A stretch of 47,697 nucleotides of DNA. It comes from Ministeria vibrans ATCC 50519 (lineage: Eukaryota > Protista > Filasterea). Each line of letters starts with the position of its first letter. Within the stretch, counting starts at the first letter, position 1. The notes under the pieces are model-generated. The model was given only the letters and a program-made list of their open reading frames with translations. It searched no databases and was not told where the DNA came from. Below, piece by piece: positions 36,778-47,493 of this stretch. The translations under genes were made by a program, and so were the position numbers. The DNA is taken from contig CALSCP010002677.1 of the NCBI GenBank assembly GCA_943704425.1, positions 28,884 through 76,580 of the forward strand, written 5' to 3'.

Positions 36778-38213
36778 TCATTCCTCCTCATTGACAAAAA
36801 GCGGATTCGAGTAGACGTGGTCCGCCTCGATGCTCCCAGTCGAAAGGCACTTTTCGTCGCGGAAGTCTTTGTTGCTGAACATCTCGTCGTCGTCTTCGGG
36901 ATTGGCAACGTCAAGGGGCTCCACTGCAAAGCCCGACTGAATGTACGCGTCGATCTGGCTGTCATAAAGACTACTTGGGTAGCGATGAGTAGACATCGAT
37001 GCGGTCATGAGGTGAGATGCACTAGCAACGCTGGTGCGGCGACTGTCCTGCGGAGACATGGCCATGTCACTGCCGGGGGGCAGGAGGTCATTCAGAAGCT
37101 CTCTTGCCTGCTTCGCAACTACCATAGTGCGTTGCTCGCGCTGTCGTGAGCGGAACACCATAAAGGCAAGCGCACCAATAATCACCAGTGCCAGAACAAC
37201 TCCACCCGCAATGGCGGCGATGAGCACGGCCGACGACGACCCACTCGACGAGCCACTACCGCCTAGAACCGCCGAGGTAGGCGCCGCCGAGACAAACGTC
37301 ACTGACCCGCCCCCCAGACTCGCAATGATGGCTGCCTGCGCACCCGTGAGCGAGTCGGACACCACTGACGACTCAATGGGCAGTCCCGTCGCCGGATTGA
37401 TCACAAAGAACACGACACGTACTTGCGAGCCCACATTGACAATCTCCGTGATGGTCACGTCGGTCGAGGAGACTGAGCCGGCGCGACGACGACCCGACAG
37501 CGCCGGATTGAGTGCGTCGGCAATGGCTGCCTGGAGTGCCGAGTCCTGGCACGCAACGCTGGACGTTGAAATGCCGCCCACGACGAGATTGACGCGCGCG
37601 TCCTGCTGTGCCGTGGTGTACGTGATCACCTCGCATGTGTCCATCACACCGTTGACTTCGCTAAAGCCAAAGTTACAGCGAGCACACTGACTGTCGGTCG
37701 CACTGGAGCAGACGAGCGACGACGCAAGGCACGCCGACCCCGTAAGACAGTTGGCGATGGCAGTACAGGCAGTGCACGCGCCAGCCGACAGGAAATAGCC
37801 GTCGTTGCAGGCGGTGCAGGCACTGTTGGTCGCACCCGCACACATTGAGACTGCCGCACAGCCGGTGAACGAGGCGAGTGTTGCACATGCTGAGCATGAG
37901 TTCCCGCTGCCGTAGAAGCCGGTGCCACACGTGCACGCGAACCCGTTCAGCTGGTTCTCGCACGTGTTGGGACTGCTTCCACACGGCGAGGAGGCGCACT
38001 AAAATGAAACGAAGAGTGAGTTCAAGAGAGAGTTCAAGAGAGAGTTCAAGAGGGTTCAAGAATTCAAGTGTTCAAGAGTTCAAGAGTTCAAGAGTTCAAG
38101 AGAGAGAGAGAGAGTTCAAGAGAGAGAGTTCAAGAGAGTTCAAGAGAGTTCAAGAGAGTTCAAGAGAAGGGAGGGAGGGAGAAAGAAACAAAAGTGATAG
38201 AGAGAGAGAGAGA

Positions 38214-38294
<81 letters not shown>

Positions 38295-41200
38295 GGGAGG
38301 GAGAAAGAAACAAAGTGATATCAGGTGAATATTTTACCTCATCAATGTCGGATTCGCAGTGGGTTCCGGTGTAGCCTGGGACACACTGACACGAGTAGCG
38401 AGCGACATGGTCCACACAAGTGGCACCGTTGCGACACGGACTCGAAGCGCACTCGTCAACAGCCGTGGCGCAGGTGTCGCCCTGGTAACCAGCGGCACAG
38501 GCACACGAGAATGAGTTCACCTGGTCCGAACATGTACCGCCATTCGCACACGGGTTCGACGCACACTCGTTCTTGTTGGTCGCGCATGTGTTTCCAATGT
38601 AGCCGGCAAGGCAGTCGCATGAAAATCCATTGACTGCGTCGGTACACGTTCCTCCATTCAGACAGGGACCCATCGCACAGTCGTCGATATTCTGCGAACA
38701 GATGGTGCCGGTGTAGCCGGTGACACAGTTACACGTGAACCTATTGACGCCGTCTACGCACGTGCCCTGGTTGACACACGGGTTCGACGCACACTCATTC
38801 GTGTTGGTGGCACACGTGTCGCCCGCATAGCCAACAACACAGGCACAGCTAAAGGCATTCACTTGGTTGGTGCACGTGCCTCCATTGGCACACGGGTTCG
38901 ACAGACACTCGTTCACTTCGCTAGCACATGTGACACCAATGAAGCCAGCAAGACAGTCACAGGTAAATCCGCCGGTAGCATCCACACAAGTGGCGCTATT
39001 CTGGCACGGCGACGAGGCGCACTCGTCGACGTTCGCCTCGCATGTCGGTCCAAAGAAGCCCGTCACACAGTCACACGTGTACGCGTTTACCTGGTCGACA
39101 CACGAACCACCATTCTTGCAGGGTGCGCCCACACATTCATCAATGTTCTCGGCACACAGTGCGCCACTCCAGCCGGCCACACACGAGCACACGTAGCTAT
39201 TGACGTGGTCCTCACAGGTGGCCCCGTTGGCGCAAGGCGATGACGCACACTCGTCAATGGCCTCGGAACAGACCAAGCCCTGATGGCCCGCGGGACACTC
39301 GCAAGCAAACTGACCAATACTGTTGGCGCATGTTCCGCCGTTCTCGCACGGACTTGATGCACACTAATCAAAAAGTAAGAACAAAAAAACGATCTCTCTC
39401 ATTTCCATGTTTGATTCAAACCTCATCAATGTCAATGGAGCAGTCATCTCCAGCGTAGCCTCCGATACACTGACAGGAAAAGCCATTTGTAAGGTCGGTG
39501 CAGGTACCATCGTGGAGGCAGGGCGAAGAGGTACACTCATCAACACCGCCGTCACAGACGACACCCGCAAAGCCATTCGGGCAGTTGCAGGAAAAGGAGC
39601 CGACGAGGTCGTTGCAGGTGCCGCCGTTGGCACAGGGCGTTGAAGCGCACTCGTTGATCTCGACATCGCACAGCGCGCCAGTGAAACCAGTGGCACAGGC
39701 ACAGGCGAACATATCGGGGCGTGTGGTCGCAAGCACAGTCACAATTCCAGTCATTTGCGGATGGACATTGCACGCGTAGGGCACAGAGCCTGCATTGTTA
39801 AACGTCTGAAGGTAGACGCTGCTGGCAGGAAGCGAAGTCGAGTCAAACGTGGCCACCGAGCCTGCCTGGGATGTCACCGAGTGTGGCAGTCCATCGGTGA
39901 ACGTCCACTGCACTGTGTCACCCGCATAGACAGTTGTCCGGATGGGAAATGGACCACACGCAAGGCACCAATTCACATTCACCGTGAGCGGCTTCCCTTG
40001 CGAACACACACCGCTATTCTGGCAGGGCGACGACGCACACTCATCAATGTCAGAATCACACACATCGCCAGTAAAACCAGCGGCACAGCCACATGTGAAT
40101 CCATTGACAATGTCCGCACACAGTCCACCATTCAAGCATGGATTCGAATCACACTCATCAATATCATCCGCACACGTTGTGCCCGTGTAGCCCGCCACAC
40201 ATGAGCATACAAACGCGTCGATGTTGTTGGCACAGGCAGCGCCATTTTGACAAGGCGATGAAGCACACTGAAAAAAAAAGCGTCAAAACTACAATAATTC
40301 TTATTTGATTCTATTTCAAACCTCATTGATGTCCGCGTCACAAAGAGTGCCGGTGTAGCCCGGGACACAGTCACAGGTGTATCCATTGGAAATGTCAACG
40401 CACGCGGCACCATTCTGACAGGGGTCCGAGGCGCACTCATCCGTGTCTACAGTGCACGTGAGACCGTGCCAGCCCGAGGTGCAGGCACACGTGAAACCGT
40501 TGACGGCGTCCGTACATTCACCATTGTTGGCACATGGATTCGAGGCGCACTCGTCGACGTCAACGCTGCAGTGGTCACCCGAGAAGCCCAAAGCACACGC
40601 ACACGAGTACTCGTTAATTGTGTCAGAACAGGTGGCGCCATTCAAGCACGGGTTTGAAGCGCACTCGTCAATGTCCAATTGGCACGCAATGCCATTGTAT
40701 CCCGCCTTGCAGGCACAACTGAATCCATCCACCATATCAGTGCAGGTGCCCTCATTCTGACAGGGTGCTGAGGCGCACTCGTTCACCTCCACTTCACAAT
40801 GGTCGCCATTGAAGCCTGGCGCGCACTGGCACGAATATCCCGAAGGAGGTGCCGTCACAGTGAGCGTGCCAGTCATCGAGCCGTGCACGACACAATGGTA
40901 GCTCACCGAACCCATTTGTGTGGCAACCATCTCGTATGAGTTGGAGACCACACCCGAGTCAAATAAAAAGGCACTCGCGGCGTCGGAGGTCACCGAGTGC
41001 GAAAGTGAGTCAGTGAACGACCATCGAATAGTATCACCGAGTTCCGCAGAAGTGGCAATGGGGAAAGGACCGCACGAAGTACACCAGGGTACAGTCACAA
41101 GTTTCGCCTGGGTCTCTATACAGGTGCCACCGTTGGTGCAGGGAGATGAAGCGCACTAAAAAAAAATATGAATGGAGAATAACAATATCTGGGGGATTTT

Positions 41201-44200
41201 GTTTCCTACCTCGTTGATGTTCGACTCGCATTGGGCACCGGTGAACCCAGAAGGACACGTACACAAAAAGCCGTTGACTTGGTCATTGCAGACGGCTCCA
41301 TTCTGACAAGGACTTGAAGCACACTCGTCAATATTGTTCTCGCAGTGGGCTCCAGCATGGCCCGTGACACAATTGCAAGAGTACAGGTTCACGGCATCGA
41401 CACAGGTGGCGCCATTCTCGCACGGGTTCGAAGCGCACTCGTTGATGTCATTGTCACAAAGAGTTCCGTCATAGCCTGGCACGCAATTACAGGTAAAGCT
41501 GTTGACTAAATCGTTGCAGGTGGCGCCATTTTGGCACGGTGATGAAGCACACTCATTGATGTCATTGTCGCAAAGAGTTCCGTCATAGCCCGGCACACAT
41601 GCACATGTGTAGCCGTCAACCACGTCGTTGCAGGTGGCGCCATTTTGGCACGGCGATGACGCACACTCATCCGTGTCCACGTCACACTGTATGCCAAAGT
41701 AGCCGGGGACACAGGAGCACGAGAACTTGCCCACCTGGTCGACACAGGTGGCGCCATTCTGACATGGATTCGAAGCGCACTCGTTGATGTCATTGTCACA
41801 AAGGGATCCATCGTAGCCTAGCACGCAATTACAGGTGAAGCTGTTGACTAAATCGTTGCAGGTGGCGCCATTTTGGCACGGTGATGACGCGCACTCGTTG
41901 ATGTCGTTGTCGCAGAGAGTCCCGTCATAGCCTGGCACGCAATTACACGTAAAGCTGTTGACTAAATCGCTGCAGGTGGCGGCATTCTGGCACGGTGATG
42001 AAGCACACTCATTGATCTCCGAATCGCACAGATCGCCCTCATAGCCCGGCACACACGCACATGTGTAGCCATTGACCACGTCGTTGCAGGTGGCGCCATT
42101 TTGGCACGGCGATGACGCACACTCATCCGTGTCCACGTCACACTGTATGCCAAAGTAGCCGGGGACACAGGAGCACGAGAACTTGCCCACCTGGTCGACG
42201 CAAGTGGCGCCATTCTGACATGGATTCGAAAAGCACTCGTTGATGTCATTGTTACAAAGGGTTCCGTCATAGCCGAGCGCGCAGGTGCACGAGAACTCGT
42301 TGATGCCGTCAACGCAAGTCGCACCGTTCTGGCAGGGAATCGAGCTACACTCGAGGGTGTTGGTGGCGCACGTCGTGCCCTCATAGCCGAGCGCACAGGT
42401 ACAGGTGTACGTTGCGACACCGTCGGCACAGGTAGCGCCGTTGAGACAGGGTGTTGGCAGACAATCGTCAATGTCGGTAGCACAAAACGTGCCTGTGTAG
42501 CCCGCCTCACAGGTACATGTGAAACCATCAACTTGATCGTTGCAAGTGGCACCATTCTCGCAGGGTCCCGATGCACACTCGTTGATGTCGGAGTCACATT
42601 TGGTGCCGGAGTAGCCTGCCTTACAGGAGCAGGAGCCCACCTGATCTTGACACTCCTGCGATGTAGAGCCGGTGGTGGAACACCCACATGGAGTACACAT
42701 ATCCAAGCCATTGGCAACGCTTGTCAGGTAGTAGTTCAAGGCGCACTCGGCGCATGTTGTAGAGGTGGGGGAAGTACACTGAGACGAGACGCAGTTGGTA
42801 GTGGCGGGACAAGGCGAACAAGTGGCAGCGCCACCTGTGACCTGTGCGCCAAAAAAACCATCCAGGCACGAGCAAGTGTATGAACCAATGGTGTTGGTGC
42901 ACCGTGAGCGAGTCTGATCACACAAATCAGTGCCCAGCGCACATTCGTTCACATCTGTTGCACAAGTGGTACTGGTGAAGCCGGGGGCACAAATGCACGT
43001 CGAGCCGACACAGCGACCACCGTTCTCACAAGTCACACTGCACACGCCGCGCATGGCCGCATAGAAGACAAGGCTACCACCCTCAAGACCGTCACACGAG
43101 CCGGTTACGGACCACGAGCCGAGTGCCTAGAAAGAAGAGAAACAAAAAGAGGAAAGAGGTAAGAACTGTAGCGTTTGATTTGTGTTTAATACCTTTGAGC
43201 AGCCGTAGCCCGCATCATAATCCTGCACAACGTTTGAGTAGCTGTAGAGATACGAGTTGCTGCATCCACTATTTAGCATTCGGTAGGTCTACAAGAGAGA
43301 TATTTATTGCATGGTTGTGAGGGCGTTTTCATTTTGCACTCACCGATGAGTGTTGATCGGGAGCGCCACTGGTAATGGCAAAGTCGCCACCACCCGAGTA
43401 GAGGGTGAGGGTGTAAGCAAGGACGGCGGACGCGGAGGTACCACTGGAGTCGGTGACGGTGACACTGGTGAGGGTTGCGGTGGTGGCGGGTGAGGCGAGC
43501 AAACGCGAGTCAAAGAGAGGCTTGTCGACCTTGAGGTAGACACCGTTGGCCGGACGCACCAGGATGGATTCGGTGGAGACGGAGCCCAGTGCGGCCTTTT
43601 GAGCGCGGTTCAAACTGGACGCTCTGCTTGTAGGTACATTGAGGTTGTATTCGTCACCCACGAGCGGAACTTCGTCATCAGCGCCCACAAACGACGCAAT
43701 CACAGTCCATCCGCCGCCTAAATTATTACATTTTAGTGTTCGCATTGTGTTGGGTTGTATTTTACCGTCGGTTGTCATGTCACAGTAGACGGTGAAGGGA
43801 TCAAGGCCCTCGTCCGTCCCATCAGGGTCAATCATGTAGAAGCCCGAGAGAGAACCTGCCGGCAGAGCCCCACACGTCGCGTACACGTCGAGGTTCTGTT
43901 TGATCCACACTTGATGAACGGAAGCAGCTTCGGAGCTAATGAAACAATGAATGAGGCGAATTATCATAATTGTTATGAACATCCTTATGATTTACTCGTT
44001 GGGATGGTCATCGCACTCCCAACGGGTACCACCGCCCGCGATACCCCAATGATTCGCGCCGCCAAGGTAGAACGGAAAGTTTGTGAAGCCACCTGTGGAG
44101 CCAGTAAAGCCAGCAGAGGTGGCCAGAGGCAACACACCAGTGTGATCAGGCATGAGAGTGATGTCAGTCTTCCAAAGGGCAGGGGTATTGGTGACCTGCG

Positions 44201-46079
44201 AGCCAGTGTTGGCAATGGCGTTCAAAGCTGCGCTGGCGGGAGTCTTGAAATGGATGATGCGCGAGTGCAGCGATGTGGTGCAGTAGAACTCGAGAGTGTC
44301 GCCTGCCGACGCAAAAACGCCGACGCTGTTGAGATTGACGCTGCTGAATCCAGTGGAGGGGCTCTGGGGCACGGCGTTGACAAGCGCCGGGTTGACCGAG
44401 GCCGCCTTGACATACGCCAGGAAGAGCATATTGCCAAAGGTGTCACAGAAGAAACTGTTAGTGACGGCGCCGCCGGGGCCATCGGGATCAAGAATGTGTG
44501 TCGTGGCCGAGGACGGGTTGGTTGGACAGCGAGCGGGCGCAGAACGGACTGCCATAAAAAACTTGAGCAGTCCACCTTCGGCGCCGTTGCACCCGTCCGT
44601 TGCTCCCCACGATCCCAATCCGGTGTTCACATCGTAGCCAGCATCGTTGTCGCTATGGAGTGGTAGTTTGTAAATTTTTTTTGGAAAATACTGGTGAGTA
44701 GGTTTTTTAGCCTTACGCTGATGCGCTACTGAAGCTATAGAGAAACATTGAACCGCACCCAGTATTGAGGTTGTAGTACGAGTCGGTGTTATGATGGTCA
44801 ATGTGCGTGCCAAGGCCGACATCACCGCCAGAGATAGAGAGAGCCTCGTTGCCGGTGAAACCCCACTTGGCAAAGCTGGTCGTGCCATCGTTCGCCTCGA
44901 TTGTGACAGGCTCGACGACATAGCCGCCTTCAAGGAGACGCTGATTGAAGGGCACCTGACTCATCTTGAGCCAAACTTGCTCACCCTGACGTACGAAAAT
45001 GGTCTCGGTTGACAGCTCGGAGAGGAGTACCTTTGCGGCGCGATCGATATTGAACGCTTGCAGAGTGGGCGCGAGAGGGTTGCCCGACACAGCCGTGTCA
45101 CTGGTCATTGCACGTTCGTTGTCGGCGCCCGTTGCAGCATACAGAATGGTGTAGGCTGGACCGCCATCGGGCGGGAAGTAGCACGGGACGATAATTGCAG
45201 ACTGCTCGGACTCGGGGCGAATGAGGTAGCGACCTGACACGGTGGACACAGCGGGCAGGTCAGAGCATGTCTTGGCGGTGCTGGTCGTGGGTGTGCGCGA
45301 GGTAGTGGCGCGGTACCAGATGTTGTGGAGGGTTTTTTGGGACGCGTCATTGGTGTAGTCATCGCATTCGAATCGTGTGCCTACGCCACGAATTCCCCAG
45401 TGGTACTGGCCACCAACCCAGAAGGGGAACTGGGTGAGTGAGTCGGTGCTGCCAGAATAGCCAGAGGTGGTCGCCAGAGGCAGATTGGCATTCTGGAAGG
45501 TGAGCGGTTGAGTGTGCTGAGTATAGTCGCTGACAACAAACTGCTGCTGGAGCGTCTCTGCGGCAACAAGAAGACGTGCGGCGTCCGTCTTGAAGTGGAT
45601 GGTGCGCGTGTGACCCGACGTCTCGCAGTAGAAGATAAGCTCATCACCAATCAGAGGTGTGTTGGCGGCGAGTGCCATGTTGGAGTAGCCCGAGCGCGAT
45701 GAAGTGGGCATTTGATTGCCAACGAGCGCATTGTTGGCATTGGCTGCGTGTGCGTACGACAAGAACAGCTGGTAGCCGCCACCGTCAGTGACCTATAAAA
45801 ATAAAAGAAGCAGTTTTTTCTGAGACTGTGTTGAGAGTTAACGTTACATACCTGGTCGCAAAATACGTGTTGGGGATTAGCACCAGTGCCGGCGGGGTCA
45901 ATGAGACGGAGGCCCGAGGTGATATCACCGCGAGAGACACGCCATTCTTGGCACGAGGCAGGCAGGGGATCGCGTAGGGCGATGCGGACGTGGAAGCGAC
46001 CGCGAGAGCCTATATGAAAATTAAAATGACAGTTATTATTATTATTGTTATTATTATTATTATTATTATTGTTATTATT

Positions 46080-46124
<45 letters not shown>

Positions 46125-47493
46125 TTTGTTATTATTATTATTATTGTTATTTTTTTATTACTTTTTTTCGTGGTCTCATACCTTCGGTATCATCACACGA
46201 ATCTGTGGCGGTCCATGCGCCAAGACCGGTGTTAACATCAAGGCCCGTGTCGCCGTCAGAGGCAATACCGCTGTAACTGTACAAGAGCATACTACTGCAC
46301 GCAGTGTTGAGCAGACGGAAAGACGAGGAGTGCAGGTCAAAGCTGGTTGTGGTCACGCCAATTTCGCCGCCACCCGCCGTGTTGAATGTCGAGTAGCCTT
46401 GACGCGCGCTTGTCGTCTCGCCACTTGAGATTTTCACGGAGACCGGAACATTGGTCCAGTGATTGCTGGCGTCGAGGTTGGCGTCAAGCAGCGAGGCCGA
46501 AGTGCGCATCCAGGCGCCCGATGGGCGCGAGTAGAGCGTGCTGGCCGACCGAGCGCCCAGGGTCTTCTTGAATGCCATGGGGAGGTTGTAGAAGGACACG
46601 GGGGTGCCCGCCTCAAGGGGGTTGCCATCGGTGCTCACAGCCGACGAGGCAGTCGATGTAATCTGGAGCAAAAATATTGTATTATTAGTAGAATGAATGA
46701 AAGAGAAAATAAGTTTGATCTACCTGCGCTTGTCCATCGGCGCCTGAAGTGGCATAGACAATAGTCCAACCGCCTCCATCGGTGGTCATATCACAGAAGA
46801 CCTGCTGTGCACCAACGGAGCCAAAGGGACCGTCGGGATCGACGAGGTAGCTGCCCGAGAGCGACGTGGGGGGGAGTTGGGAGCAAGAGCGAGGGAGTTC
46901 GCGTGGCGTTGCTTGAGCGGGACGCATTGCGACAAGGAATTGGAGGGAAGCAGTGGGAGCACTGTTGCAGGTGGCGGTGACGTGCCACGAGCCCAGAGCC
47001 TGGTTTACATCGTAGGAGGCAGGGCCACCATAGTTGTACAGGATGGAGTTGGCACAGTCTTCATTTAATGCAATGTAATTGGGTCCATGTTGATCCGGTG
47101 GGCTACCCGTCACGACGGAAAAGTCACCGCCTGCCGAGTTACCATAGTTTGCGTATGCCTGATACGCCGCCGTGGTCGTACCGTCGCTGGCGGTGGCCGT
47201 GGTCGACACAACGCGGTAGGTGTTGGGCGTGTTCAGGTTGGCGTCAAAGAGCGCGTGAGATGTCGTGAAAAATGAGGTGCGATCGAAGCGCAAGAACAGT
47301 GACTCTCCACTAGAAAGAAAAAAAAAGAATCGAATAATGTTACAATAAAAAATGTGACGGGAGACTTAGTACACACTTACCTAATTGCACTGAGGGCCAT
47401 TTTGGTCGCACGGTTGACATTGAAAGGGACGGGTGTTGTGCCCAGTGGGTTTCCTGTGATAGGCGTGTCGGACGTGAGAGACTGCTCGCCAGC
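36778..47493 (-). CDS. 3' part of a giant type-I membrane protein: fibrinogen-like (YCDxxxxGGGW) modules, about 34 EGF repeats, laminin-EGF, furin-like Cys repeats, two cupredoxin inserts, SEA-like domain, TM, Tyr-bearing tail (5' end outside window)
   Basis: All exons from 47493 to 36778 join in frame through GT-AG introns. Repeated [12 protein letters not shown] heads; [16 protein letters not shown] repeats; [28 protein letters not shown]; tail ending [11 protein letters not shown]. Confidence 0.85.
38018..38320. repeat. Intronic compound satellite (AGAGTTCAAG, GAAACAAAGTGATA, (GA)n)
   Basis: Lies within the last intron of the giant receptor. Confidence 0.9.
39734..39994 (-). other. Cupredoxin (type-1 copper) domain 2 inside an EGF repeat of the giant receptor
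   Basis: [18 protein letters not shown]...FDS...[25 protein letters not shown]. Confidence 0.85.
40856..41107 (-). other. Cupredoxin (type-1 copper) domain 1 inside an EGF repeat of the giant receptor
   Basis: [18 protein letters not shown]...FDSG...[19 protein letters not shown]. Confidence 0.8.

What the first reader, a model, noticed from the sequence alone, without database searches (positions are those of the whole stretch)
39700..41155. Blue-copper (cupredoxin) domains spliced into the middle of EGF repeats in a Notch-like receptor
Seen: two EGF repeats are split between Cys3 and Cys4 by an insert of roughly 90 aa. They read [18 protein letters not shown][insert][19 protein letters not shown] and [16 protein letters not shown][insert][21 protein letters not shown]. 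Both inserts show the plastocyanin/amicyanin pattern GDT(I/V)xW...H(S)VT...FDS...G..Y.C-x2-H-x2-M.G...V, with all four type-1 copper ligands present (HCVVHGSM; ACNVHPQM). Established: the short C-x2-H-x2-M loop is the amicyanin-type site, and the Cys3-Cys4 segment is the EGF beta-hairpin, which could display an inserted domain sideways from the rod. Inference: this is a cell-surface rod decorated with redox-active copper centres, acting as a redox/copper sensor, an extracellular electron relay or a redox-switched adhesin. I do not know of this architecture being described.
Basis: partly seen in the sequence, partly recalled or inferred. Interest (0 to 1): 0.88.

Follow-up and report, generated by a model that had tools for sequence, protein, structure and literature searches.

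The report
Blue-copper domains nested inside EGF repeats
A giant cell-surface protein of a marine protist carries two complete blue-copper (cupredoxin) domains, each inserted into the hairpin of an EGF repeat; the composite module recurs in this genome's receptor kinases and an adhesion GPCR, I found it described nowhere, and its function is untested.

Summary
On the minus strand, two calcium-binding-type EGF repeats (41155-40796 and 40039-39668) are each split between Cys3 and Cys4 by 94 and 98 residues.

- **Fold:** by sequence profile and by predicted structure, the inserts are amicyanin/plastocyanin-type cupredoxins.
- **Copper ligands:** all four type-1 ligands (His, Cys, His, Met) are present, and they are invariant in 16 paralogous copies.
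- **Translated, not introns:** the closest paralog pair has dN/dS of about 0.18. This gene's short introns are 54-58 nt and, for the two measured, 24-32% GC; the inserts are about 280-295 nt and about 55% GC.
- **Rod kept intact:** AlphaFold2 models (pLDDT 89) superpose the three-EGF rod on Notch1 EGF11-13 and the insert on amicyanin.
- **Family in this genome:** at least 13 nested modules. Hosts include three receptor tyrosine kinases, an adhesion GPCR and several EGF-only membrane proteins. There are also four un-nested copies, two of them at the outer end of a b561-PAS-NADPH-oxidase gene.

The host is not a Notch: no LNR or ankyrin repeats. Laminin L4 domains are a precedent for nesting at Cys3/Cys4, but I found no report or database relative of a nested cupredoxin. 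Function is inferred: laterally displayed one-electron copper sites. A relay along the rod is unlikely, because the two sites lie six EGFs apart. RNA evidence could not be obtained. The scan had already noted this module at other loci of the same genome.

The parts
41213..43054 (-). Upstream EGF-array exon (open frame; 13 regular EGF repeats plus cysteine-rich N-terminal part). The gene continues upstream (fibrinogen-like head modules to about 47400) and its 5' limit was not determined.
41156..41212 (-). Intron, 57 nt, GT..AG, phase 0, 32% GC, between ...NINE and Cys1 of split EGF 1
40322..41155 (-). Exon B (278 aa): split EGF with cupredoxin 1, followed by four regular EGF repeats
41120..41155 (-). 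Split EGF 1, N-half (Cys1-Cys3)
40838..41119 (-). Cupredoxin insert 1 (94 aa). W-C-x2-C-G-P-F-P at 41086-41060. Ligand codons: His 40999-40997, Cys 40894-40892, His 40885-40883, Met 40876-40874.
40796..40837 (-). Split EGF 1, C-half (aromatic-x-Cys4-x-Cys5...Cys6)
40268..40321 (-). Intron, 54 nt, 24% GC, phase 0
39422..40267 (-). Exon C (282 aa): two regular EGFs, split EGF with cupredoxin 2, two regular EGFs
40004..40039 (-). Split EGF 2, N-half (Cys1-Cys3)
39710..40003 (-). Cupredoxin insert 2 (98 aa). W-C-x2-C-G-P-F-P at 39970-39944. Ligand codons: His 39883-39881, Cys 39772-39770, His 39763-39761, Met 39754-39752.
39668..39709 (-). Split EGF 2, C-half
39364..39421 (-). Intron, 58 nt, phase 0
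38338..39363 (-). Exon D (342 aa): nine regular EGF repeats
37999..38337 (-). Intron, 339 nt, made of (CT)n and TCTTGAAC repeats
36781..37998 (-). Last exon (406 aa): one EGF, a cysteine-rich stretch, a juxtamembrane domain, one transmembrane helix and a cytoplasmic tail of about 120 aa. No LNR, ankyrin or kinase domain.

Best explanation
Shown:
- The gene encodes a type I membrane protein whose ectodomain is a long rod of about 33 EGF repeats.
- Two of these repeats each carry a complete bacterial-type, amicyanin-like cupredoxin domain inserted at the turn of the main EGF hairpin, between Cys3 and Cys4.
- The inserts are translated and under purifying selection.
- They keep all four type-1 copper ligands.
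- In the predicted structure they fold beside an undisturbed EGF rod.
- The EGF-cupredoxin composite is a reusable module. At least 13 copies sit in about 11 genes of this genome, including receptor tyrosine kinases and an adhesion GPCR.

Inferred:
- Copper is loaded in the secretory pathway by the genome's ATP7-like pumps.
- Each domain is tied to the rod by its two ends at the pole opposite the copper loop. The exposed His edge of the copper site therefore points away from the rod.
- Each site acts as an independent, laterally displayed one-electron transfer station at the cell surface.
- The most likely electron partner is the same genome's cupredoxin-b561-PAS-NADPH-oxidase protein, whose two outer cupredoxins belong to this same family, or other extracellular redox partners.
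- This would bring redox chemistry next to adhesion and signalling receptors.
For: **Sequence and frame:**

**Cupredoxin identity:**
- PDB phmmer 6.6e-6 and 1.7e-4.
- Pfam Copper-bind 21.4 bits, and 12 of 16 copies match it at E<=0.01.
- NCBIfam amicyanin, halocyanin and plastocyanin models.
- Family profile against PDB: 8.6e-18 and 8e-14, with ligand-for-ligand alignment to amicyanin His53/Cys92/His95/Met98.

**Fold:**
- AlphaFold2 pLDDT 89.2 for the split EGF plus insert 1; best Foldseek hits are amicyanin, pseudoazurin and plastocyanin.
- The 200-residue EGF-[EGF::Cu]-EGF model has pLDDT 89.2. It matches Notch1 EGF11-13 over about 198 columns (TM 0.74-0.81 on the target) and also amicyanin.

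**Selection:**
- His, Cys, His and Met are invariant in 16 copies that are only 32-52% identical to insert 1.
- dN/dS is 0.163/0.921 for the closest pair; mean pN is 0.43 against mean pS 0.72.

**Not introns:** the neighbouring introns are 54-58 nt and 24-32% GC. The insert cores measured have about 55% GC and the same codon-position GC pattern as the EGF exons.

**Family and hosts:**

**NOX-linked copies:**

**Copper pumps:** HMA-domain P-type ATPases.

**Origin:** a single origin of the nested modules is not rejected (p-AU 0.415; tree).
Against: - No copper binding, spectrum or redox activity has been measured.
- Pfam does not reach its threshold on insert 1 alone.
- The two copper sites of this protein are six EGF repeats apart, so they cannot pass electrons to each other. 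No partner is demonstrated.
- Type-1 copper proteins can also serve as mere binding modules; ephrins are the copper-free extreme.
- The link to the NADPH-oxidase gene rests only on shared domain family and shared genome.
Confidence: 0.6

Rival explanations
1. The nested cupredoxins are protein- or ligand-binding (adhesion or recognition) modules. Copper serves only as a structural cofactor, as in the path proposed for ephrins and as in some plant phytocyanins. No electron transfer is involved.
For: - The hosts are adhesion and signalling receptors: RTKs, an adhesion GPCR and EGF rods.
- Ephrins are cell-surface cupredoxin folds thought to derive from monodomain cupredoxins of unicellular relatives of animals (PMC6485061; PMC6993872).
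- Laminin L4 domains nested at the same EGF site have no known catalytic role (PMC5338690).
Against: - All four ligands, including the axial Met, are invariant in 16 diverged copies. A pure binding module would not be expected to keep this: ephrins lost them.
- No ephrin match in Pfam at E<=0.1 or among the best 50 fold hits.
- Members of the same family sit on an NADPH-oxidase/b561 protein.
Confidence: 0.25
2. The modules are copper or redox sensors. Occupancy or oxidation state of the site changes the receptor's conformation or oligomerisation and so gates signalling.
For: The module is placed in the ectodomains of receptors with kinase or 7TM outputs, and the ligand set is conserved.
Against: - Type-1 sites are rigid and change little between Cu(I), Cu(II) and apo forms. 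This is established knowledge; apo-plastocyanin 2pcy appears among the fold hits.
- This window's host has no recognisable signalling domain in its tail.
- The domain is attached through a hairpin tip, which transmits little strain to the rod (inference).
Confidence: 0.12
3. The inserts are not part of the mature protein. They are in-frame introns or a pseudo-exon, or they are an assembly or contamination artefact.
For: No RNA data could be obtained for this locus. The domain type is otherwise mainly bacterial and archaeal.
Against: - Open frames without stops; dN/dS about 0.18.
- Exon-like composition against short AT-rich introns.
- The same junction occurs at 13 independent places on 11 contigs, with diverged sequence.
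- The EGF halves on both sides are needed to complete a six-cysteine repeat.
- The fold of the composite is predicted with confidence.
Confidence: 0.03

Closest known systems
Amicyanin, pseudoazurin and plastocyanin (monodomain type-1 copper proteins), and the C-terminal cupredoxin of the Nitrosopumilus maritimus NirK-like multicopper oxidase (PDB 9cck)
   Same: Same fold and same four ligands. Both inserts of this window have the short C-x2-H-x2-M amicyanin-type loop. Best sequence and fold matches.
   Different: - Not free-standing periplasmic or lumenal shuttles: they are internal domains of a eukaryotic surface protein.
- Scores are far below the amicyanin equivalog cut-off (18-41 against 110 bits).
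- There is an extra N-terminal W-C...C motif.
- No methylamine dehydrogenase context.
Laminin L4 (domain IV) nested in a laminin-type EGF (LE) repeat
   Same: A beta-sandwich domain inserted between Cys3 and Cys4 of an EGF-like repeat, without breaking the rod (PMC5338690).
   Different: - The LE repeat has eight cysteines; these repeats have six and are of the calcium-binding type at their N-terminal side.
- The L4 fold is CBM35-like, not cupredoxin, and carries no metal redox site.
Ephrin receptor-binding domain and plant phytocyanins (cell-surface cupredoxin folds)
   Same: Cupredoxin-fold domains displayed on the outer face of the plasma membrane of eukaryotes. Ephrins are proposed to derive from monodomain cupredoxins of unicellular holozoans (PMC6485061).
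   Different: - Ephrins lack the copper ligands and are terminal domains on a short stalk. Phytocyanins are GPI-anchored single domains.
- Neither is nested in an EGF.
- No ephrin match here.
Notch, fibrillin, Crumbs and Eyes-shut type calcium-binding EGF arrays
   Same: - Tandem 38-residue period.
- D/N-x-D/N-E before Cys1.
- Best database matches of the paralogous EGF region are animal proteins of this kind.
- The three-EGF model superposes on Notch1 EGF11-13.
   Different: - No LNR, NOD, RAM or ankyrin parts, so this is not a Notch.
- None of the 120 best animal EGF proteins lists a Copper-bind domain.

Membership tests
Type-1 copper cupredoxin (Pfam Copper-bind PF00127, cupredoxin clan) | Greek-key beta-sandwich cupredoxin fold | tested here: met
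   AlphaFold2 pLDDT 89 for both modules. Foldseek gives amicyanin, pseudoazurin and plastocyanin at E 3e-7 to 1e-5.
Type-1 copper cupredoxin (Pfam Copper-bind PF00127, cupredoxin clan) | His ... Cys-x(n)-His-x(n)-Met ligand set at the aligned positions | tested here: met
   Aligned to amicyanin His53, Cys92, His95 and Met98. Invariant in 16 paralogous copies.
Type-1 copper cupredoxin (Pfam Copper-bind PF00127, cupredoxin clan) | Score above Pfam's curated threshold | tested here: inconclusive
   - Insert 2: 21.4 bits against 21.2 in exon context, 18.5 bits alone.
- Insert 1: no Pfam hit.
- 12 of 16 family members match at E<=0.01.
- The family profile hits PDB cupredoxins at 8.6e-18.
Type-1 copper cupredoxin (Pfam Copper-bind PF00127, cupredoxin clan) | Binds one copper, with absorbance near 600 nm and a narrow-hyperfine EPR signal | not testable with these tools
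   Needs expressed protein.
Amicyanin proper (NCBIfam TIGR02657 equivalog) | Score above the equivalog cut-off (110.2 bits); partner of methylamine dehydrogenase | tested here: not met
   18 to 41 bits only. Amicyanin-like in loop and fold, but not an amicyanin orthologue.
Calcium-binding EGF repeat | Six cysteines in EGF spacing, with D/N-x-D/N-E/Q before Cys1 and an aromatic two residues before Cys4 | tested here: met
   Both halves of both split repeats are present. Pfam EGF and EGF_CA hit the exons. The model's split repeat lies in line with its neighbours as in Notch1 EGF11-13.
Calcium-binding EGF repeat | Asp/Asn (hydroxylation and calcium ligand) two residues after Cys3 | tested here: not met
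   The split repeats read C-I-E, C-S-Q, C-Q-E and C-G-Q after Cys3, not C-x-D/N. The calcium site of the split repeats may be incomplete.
Notch receptor | LNR repeats, heterodimerisation domain, RAM/ankyrin intracellular part | tested here: not met
   Pfam finds none of them in the exons from 43054 to 36781. The tail is about 120 aa without a domain.
Laminin LE/L4 nested module | Insertion between Cys3 and Cys4 of the EGF-like repeat | tested here: met
   against PMC5338690.
Laminin LE/L4 nested module | Eight-cysteine LE repeat and CBM35-like L4 fold | tested here: not met
   Six-cysteine EGF and cupredoxin fold.
Ephrin | Match to the Ephrin receptor-binding domain; copper ligands lost | tested here: not met
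   No Pfam Ephrin hit at E<=0.1. No ephrin among the best 50 fold matches. The ligands are kept.

The most novel reading that the evidence does not exclude
A unicellular relative of animals runs a copper-based extracellular electron network. In this reading a cupredoxin-b561-PAS-NADPH-oxidase exports electrons to its own outer cupredoxins. These exchange electrons with cupredoxins nested in the EGF rods of receptor tyrosine kinases, adhesion GPCRs and adhesion proteins. Redox state would then be read directly by animal-type receptors. The surface-displayed, still copper-competent cupredoxin would also be the kind of intermediate postulated on the way to ephrins.
Probability: 0.15. Interest if true: 0.88.

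Novelty: new variant of a known kind. Interest (0 to 1): 0.64.

Why it matters
Blue-copper proteins are known as soluble or lipid-anchored electron shuttles, and EGF arrays as inert spacers and binding rods of animal-type receptors. Here the two are fused in the most intimate way, one domain inside the other, and all copper ligands are kept under selection. The composite has spread to receptor tyrosine kinases and an adhesion GPCR in one genome.

If the sites bind copper, this is a new way of placing a redox metal centre on signalling receptors. It would be a directly testable case of extracellular redox input to such receptors in a relative of animals.

It also bears on the proposal that ephrins arose from copper-binding cupredoxins that became attached to the cell surface.

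In practice, Pfam's Copper-bind model finds only 4 of the 17 copies in a six-frame search of the genome. Routine annotation of other protist genomes could therefore easily miss the arrangement.

Tried and rejected
**RNA evidence**

**Relatives elsewhere**
- The search for homologous proteins with insert 1 alone found nothing. The length window is 48-152 aa.
- With the two-module region of the 2808-aa paralogous frame of C1633, it returned only animal EGF proteins, none with Copper-bind.
- With the cupredoxin part alone of that frame (candidates of 1544-4914 aa), it found nothing.
- All three blanks are limited by the need for shared 5-residue words and by the length window.
- The exhaustive profile search found 39,870 cupredoxin proteins. 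The 150 shown were all multi-repeat bacterial or archaeal-type proteins without EGF or the W-C motif. It therefore could not show whether single nested copies exist elsewhere.
With A3, the metagenome scan gave only three copies of one bacterial S-layer-type protein.
- ESM Atlas gave no hit for the composite, and bacterial Copper-bind clusters for the insert.

**Literature:** five searches found no nested cupredoxin.

**Rejected readings**
- In-frame intron.
- Assembly artefact.
- Notch orthologue.
- Amicyanin orthologue.
- Ephrin relative.
- Thioredoxin-type CxxC for the W-C-x2-C motif: the Cys spacing varies from 2 to 6 residues among copies.
- Electron wire along the rod: the sites are six EGFs apart.

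**Spliced model:** exons were searched one by one by reference. The joined translation was used only inside a script to count repeats and was sent to no search tool.

**Unfinished:** the AU test for 'all copies of this genome form one clade' did not finish.
Full report
**1. What is in the sequence**

The region lies in a multi-exon gene on the minus strand. Four phase-0 introns each separate a ...D/N-I-D/N-E end from the Cys1 codon of the next EGF repeat. Three are 54-58 nt; one is 339 nt of CT-rich repeats.

From 43054 to the stop at 36781, the five exons give 1922 residues:
- 31 regular EGF-like repeats and two split ones;
- a cysteine-rich stretch and a juxtamembrane region;
- one transmembrane helix and a tail of about 120 residues.

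I joined the exons only in a script to count repeats; all searches were made exon by exon. The gene continues upstream into modules with a fibrinogen-like head, and I did not fix its start. Pfam finds only EGF families in these exons. It finds no LNR, ankyrin or kinase domain, so 'Notch-like' holds for the EGF array only.

**2. The two split repeats**

- Module 1 is 41155-40796: twelve residues from Cys1 to Cys3, then 94 residues, then the aromatic-x-Cys4-x-Cys5...Cys6 half.
- Module 2 is 40039-39668, with a 98-residue insert.

The regular repeats have eight residues between Cys3 and Cys4, so about 88-90 residues are extra.

**3. The inserts are cupredoxins**

By sequence:
- Insert 1 matches the C-terminal cupredoxin of PDB 9cck (E 6.6e-6) and amicyanin (1.7e-4).
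- Insert 2 reaches Pfam Copper-bind just above its threshold and NCBIfam amicyanin at 2e-10, far below that model's equivalog cut-off.
- A profile of 16 copies from this genome matches 9cck at 8.6e-18 and amicyanin at 8e-14. The family's His, Cys, His and Met fall on amicyanin's four ligands.

By fold:
- An AlphaFold2 model of split EGF plus insert 1 has pLDDT 89.2. Foldseek ranks amicyanin, pseudoazurin and plastocyanin first.
- A 200-residue model of EGF, split EGF with insert 2, and EGF also has pLDDT 89.2.
- That model matches two things at once. It matches the three-repeat rods of Notch1 and Notch2 EGF11-13 over about 198 alignment columns (TM 0.74-0.81 on the target, rmsd 2.4-3.9 A). It also matches amicyanin and plastocyanin.

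So the model keeps a normal straight EGF triple and hangs the copper domain on the hairpin of the middle repeat.

**4. They are translated, not spliced out**

I could not get reads.

The indirect evidence is strong:
- The frames are open.
- The closest paralogous pair has dN 0.163 against dS 0.921. Over all pairs, synonymous sites are near saturation while the protein stays alignable.
- The 255-261 nt insert cores measured have exon-like GC at each codon position (about 55% overall). The two neighbouring introns are 54-57 nt with 24-32% GC.
- Removing an insert would leave a complete EGF only if the cut were exact, yet the same junction is kept at 13 diverged places.

**5. A family in this genome**

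A six-frame search of the 29.7-Mb assembly finds 17 matches. Read in context, 13 are nested at the same Cys3/Cys4 site:
- two here and two on C1633;
- one each on C981, C1788, C1426, C1606, C1139, C1708, C1809, C232 and C121.

Four are not nested:
- one lies between EGF repeats (C1426);
- one lies in a threonine-rich mucin-like protein (C2390);
- two lie in tandem at the start of a gene on C1296. Pfam shows that this gene continues with a b561-related DUF2427 segment, a PAS domain and a ferric-reductase/NADPH-oxidase membrane domain.

In the alignment of 16 copies (32-52% identical to insert 1), ten columns are invariant. They include all four copper ligands, and a Trp-Cys at the start of the domain.

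Hosts, by my own Pfam runs:
- receptor tyrosine kinases on C1708, C1788 and C1426;
- an adhesion GPCR on C981, with Recep_L and LRR segments followed by GPS and 7tm_2;
- EGF-only proteins elsewhere.

In a maximum-likelihood tree with outside cupredoxins, this genome's copies lie on one side of a 93/76 branch. On that side with them are two of the three domains of P0103 and all six domains of P0084, two environmental proteins with threonine-rich linkers. The bacterial and archaeal multi-repeat proteins lie on the other side. The 13 nested copies plus one oxidase copy form a group with 88/83 support. Forcing the nested copies into one clade is not rejected (p-AU 0.415). One insertion event followed by duplication and shuffling of the composite, which is bounded by phase-0 introns here, is therefore the simplest history. 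It is not proven.

**6. Outside this genome**

- The nearest per-domain relatives are ordinary bacterial 'HTVT...FDSG' cupredoxins, at 60-70 bits. They lack the Trp-Cys motif and have no EGF.
- Two archaeal hits have a Cys-x5-Cys loop at the equivalent place.
- No search found the nested arrangement elsewhere. Each of these searches has blind spots, named under Tried and rejected.
- Five literature searches found none either. They did supply two pieces of context. Laminin L4 domains are inserted between Cys3 and Cys4 of LE repeats (PMC5338690). Ephrins are copper-free cupredoxin folds, proposed to derive from monodomain cupredoxins present in unicellular holozoans (PMC6485061; PMC6993872).

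**7. How it most likely works**

Shown: fold, ligands, selection, nesting, and spread among receptors.

Inferred from established knowledge:
- Secreted cuproproteins are loaded by ATP7-type pumps. The genome has HMA-domain P-type ATPases on C1244 and C2399.
- In cupredoxins the Cys-His-Met loop sits at one pole, and the last strand runs away from it. A domain tied to the EGF by both ends should therefore hold its copper site at the far pole, open to partners.
- Type-1 sites are one-electron carriers with little structural change. This favours electron transfer or mere binding over a conformational switch.
- The two sites of this protein are separated by six EGF repeats, and the two on C1633 by three. 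At roughly 2.5-3 nm per repeat, this is far beyond the tunnelling range of about 1.4 nm (both figures from my own knowledge). A wire along the rod is therefore not credible, and each site must act on its own.
- The only candidate partner that the data point to is the oxidase with two cupredoxins of the same family.

My odds:
- nested, translated, ligand-complete cupredoxin: about 0.9;
- it binds copper: about 0.75;
- its role is electron transfer at the surface: about 0.45;
- binding module with structural copper: about 0.25;
- sensor: about 0.12.

**8. Earlier notes of the scan**

The scan had already recorded this module on other DNA of the same genome:
- a Notch-like protein (s1-766890);
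- an adhesion GPCR (s1-771867);
- receptor tyrosine kinases (s1-779344, s1-778163);
- the copper-NADPH-oxidase fusion (s1-768282).

I re-derived the count of nested modules, the host types and the oxidase link myself, and my results agree. Those notes call the organism a marine protist related to animals. I did not test its identity.

**9. Verdict**

This is a real and unusual domain architecture: a new combination of two well-known domains. The nesting geometry has a precedent in laminins. The function is unknown but testable.

Noticed in passing
window 41086-41060 and 39970-39944; L003, L005-L015: Every copy of this cupredoxin family begins with Trp-Cys, followed by a second Cys 2 to 6 residues later (W-C-x2-C-G-P-F-P in both window copies). 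The variable spacing suggests a small structural disulfide loop, not a thioredoxin-type redox CxxC. Two archaeal relatives (P0124, P0141) have P-G-C-x5-C at the same place.
   Followed up: partly
L023 (G000:C1296:1-6000), minus strand: A single gene region encodes two cupredoxins of this same family, a DUF2427/b561-like segment, a PAS domain and a Ferric_reduct (NADPH-oxidase type) membrane domain. It is a candidate trans-membrane electron source for the surface cupredoxins.
   Followed up: partly
L025 (C1708), L028 (C1788), L032 (C1426), L031 (C981): The same EGF-nested cupredoxin sits in the ectodomains of three receptor tyrosine kinases. It also sits in an adhesion GPCR that combines EGF, Recep_L and LRR segments with GPS and 7tm_2.
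   Followed up: yes
window 37999-38337: The last intron of the gene is 339 nt, made almost wholly of (CT)n and TCTTGAAC repeats. The other three introns of the EGF array are 54-58 nt.
   Followed up: no
window 41430-42270: Several EGF repeats of the large exon are identical or nearly so at the protein level, with a four-repeat period.
   Followed up: no
G000 whole genome: Pfam Copper-bind finds only 4 of the 17 family copies in a six-frame search. Routine annotation would therefore miss most of them.
   Followed up: yes
L024 (Logan SRR31163101 contig, 1074 nt) = P0103: A 338-residue protein from another sample is the nearest outside relative in the tree. It has a signal peptide, three ligand-complete cupredoxins joined by Thr/Ala/Pro-rich linkers, and a hydrophobic C-terminus. 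It is a surface cupredoxin without EGF.
   Followed up: partly
G000:C1244:66995-67771 and C2399:8640-9233: Two large open frames with three and two HMA copper-binding domains. They are probably ATP7-like copper pumps.
   Followed up: no
window 43050-47400, minus strand: Upstream of the EGF array, the same frame system encodes repeated modules with a fibrinogen-like Y-C-D-M...G-G-G-W-T head that have no Pfam match.
   Followed up: no
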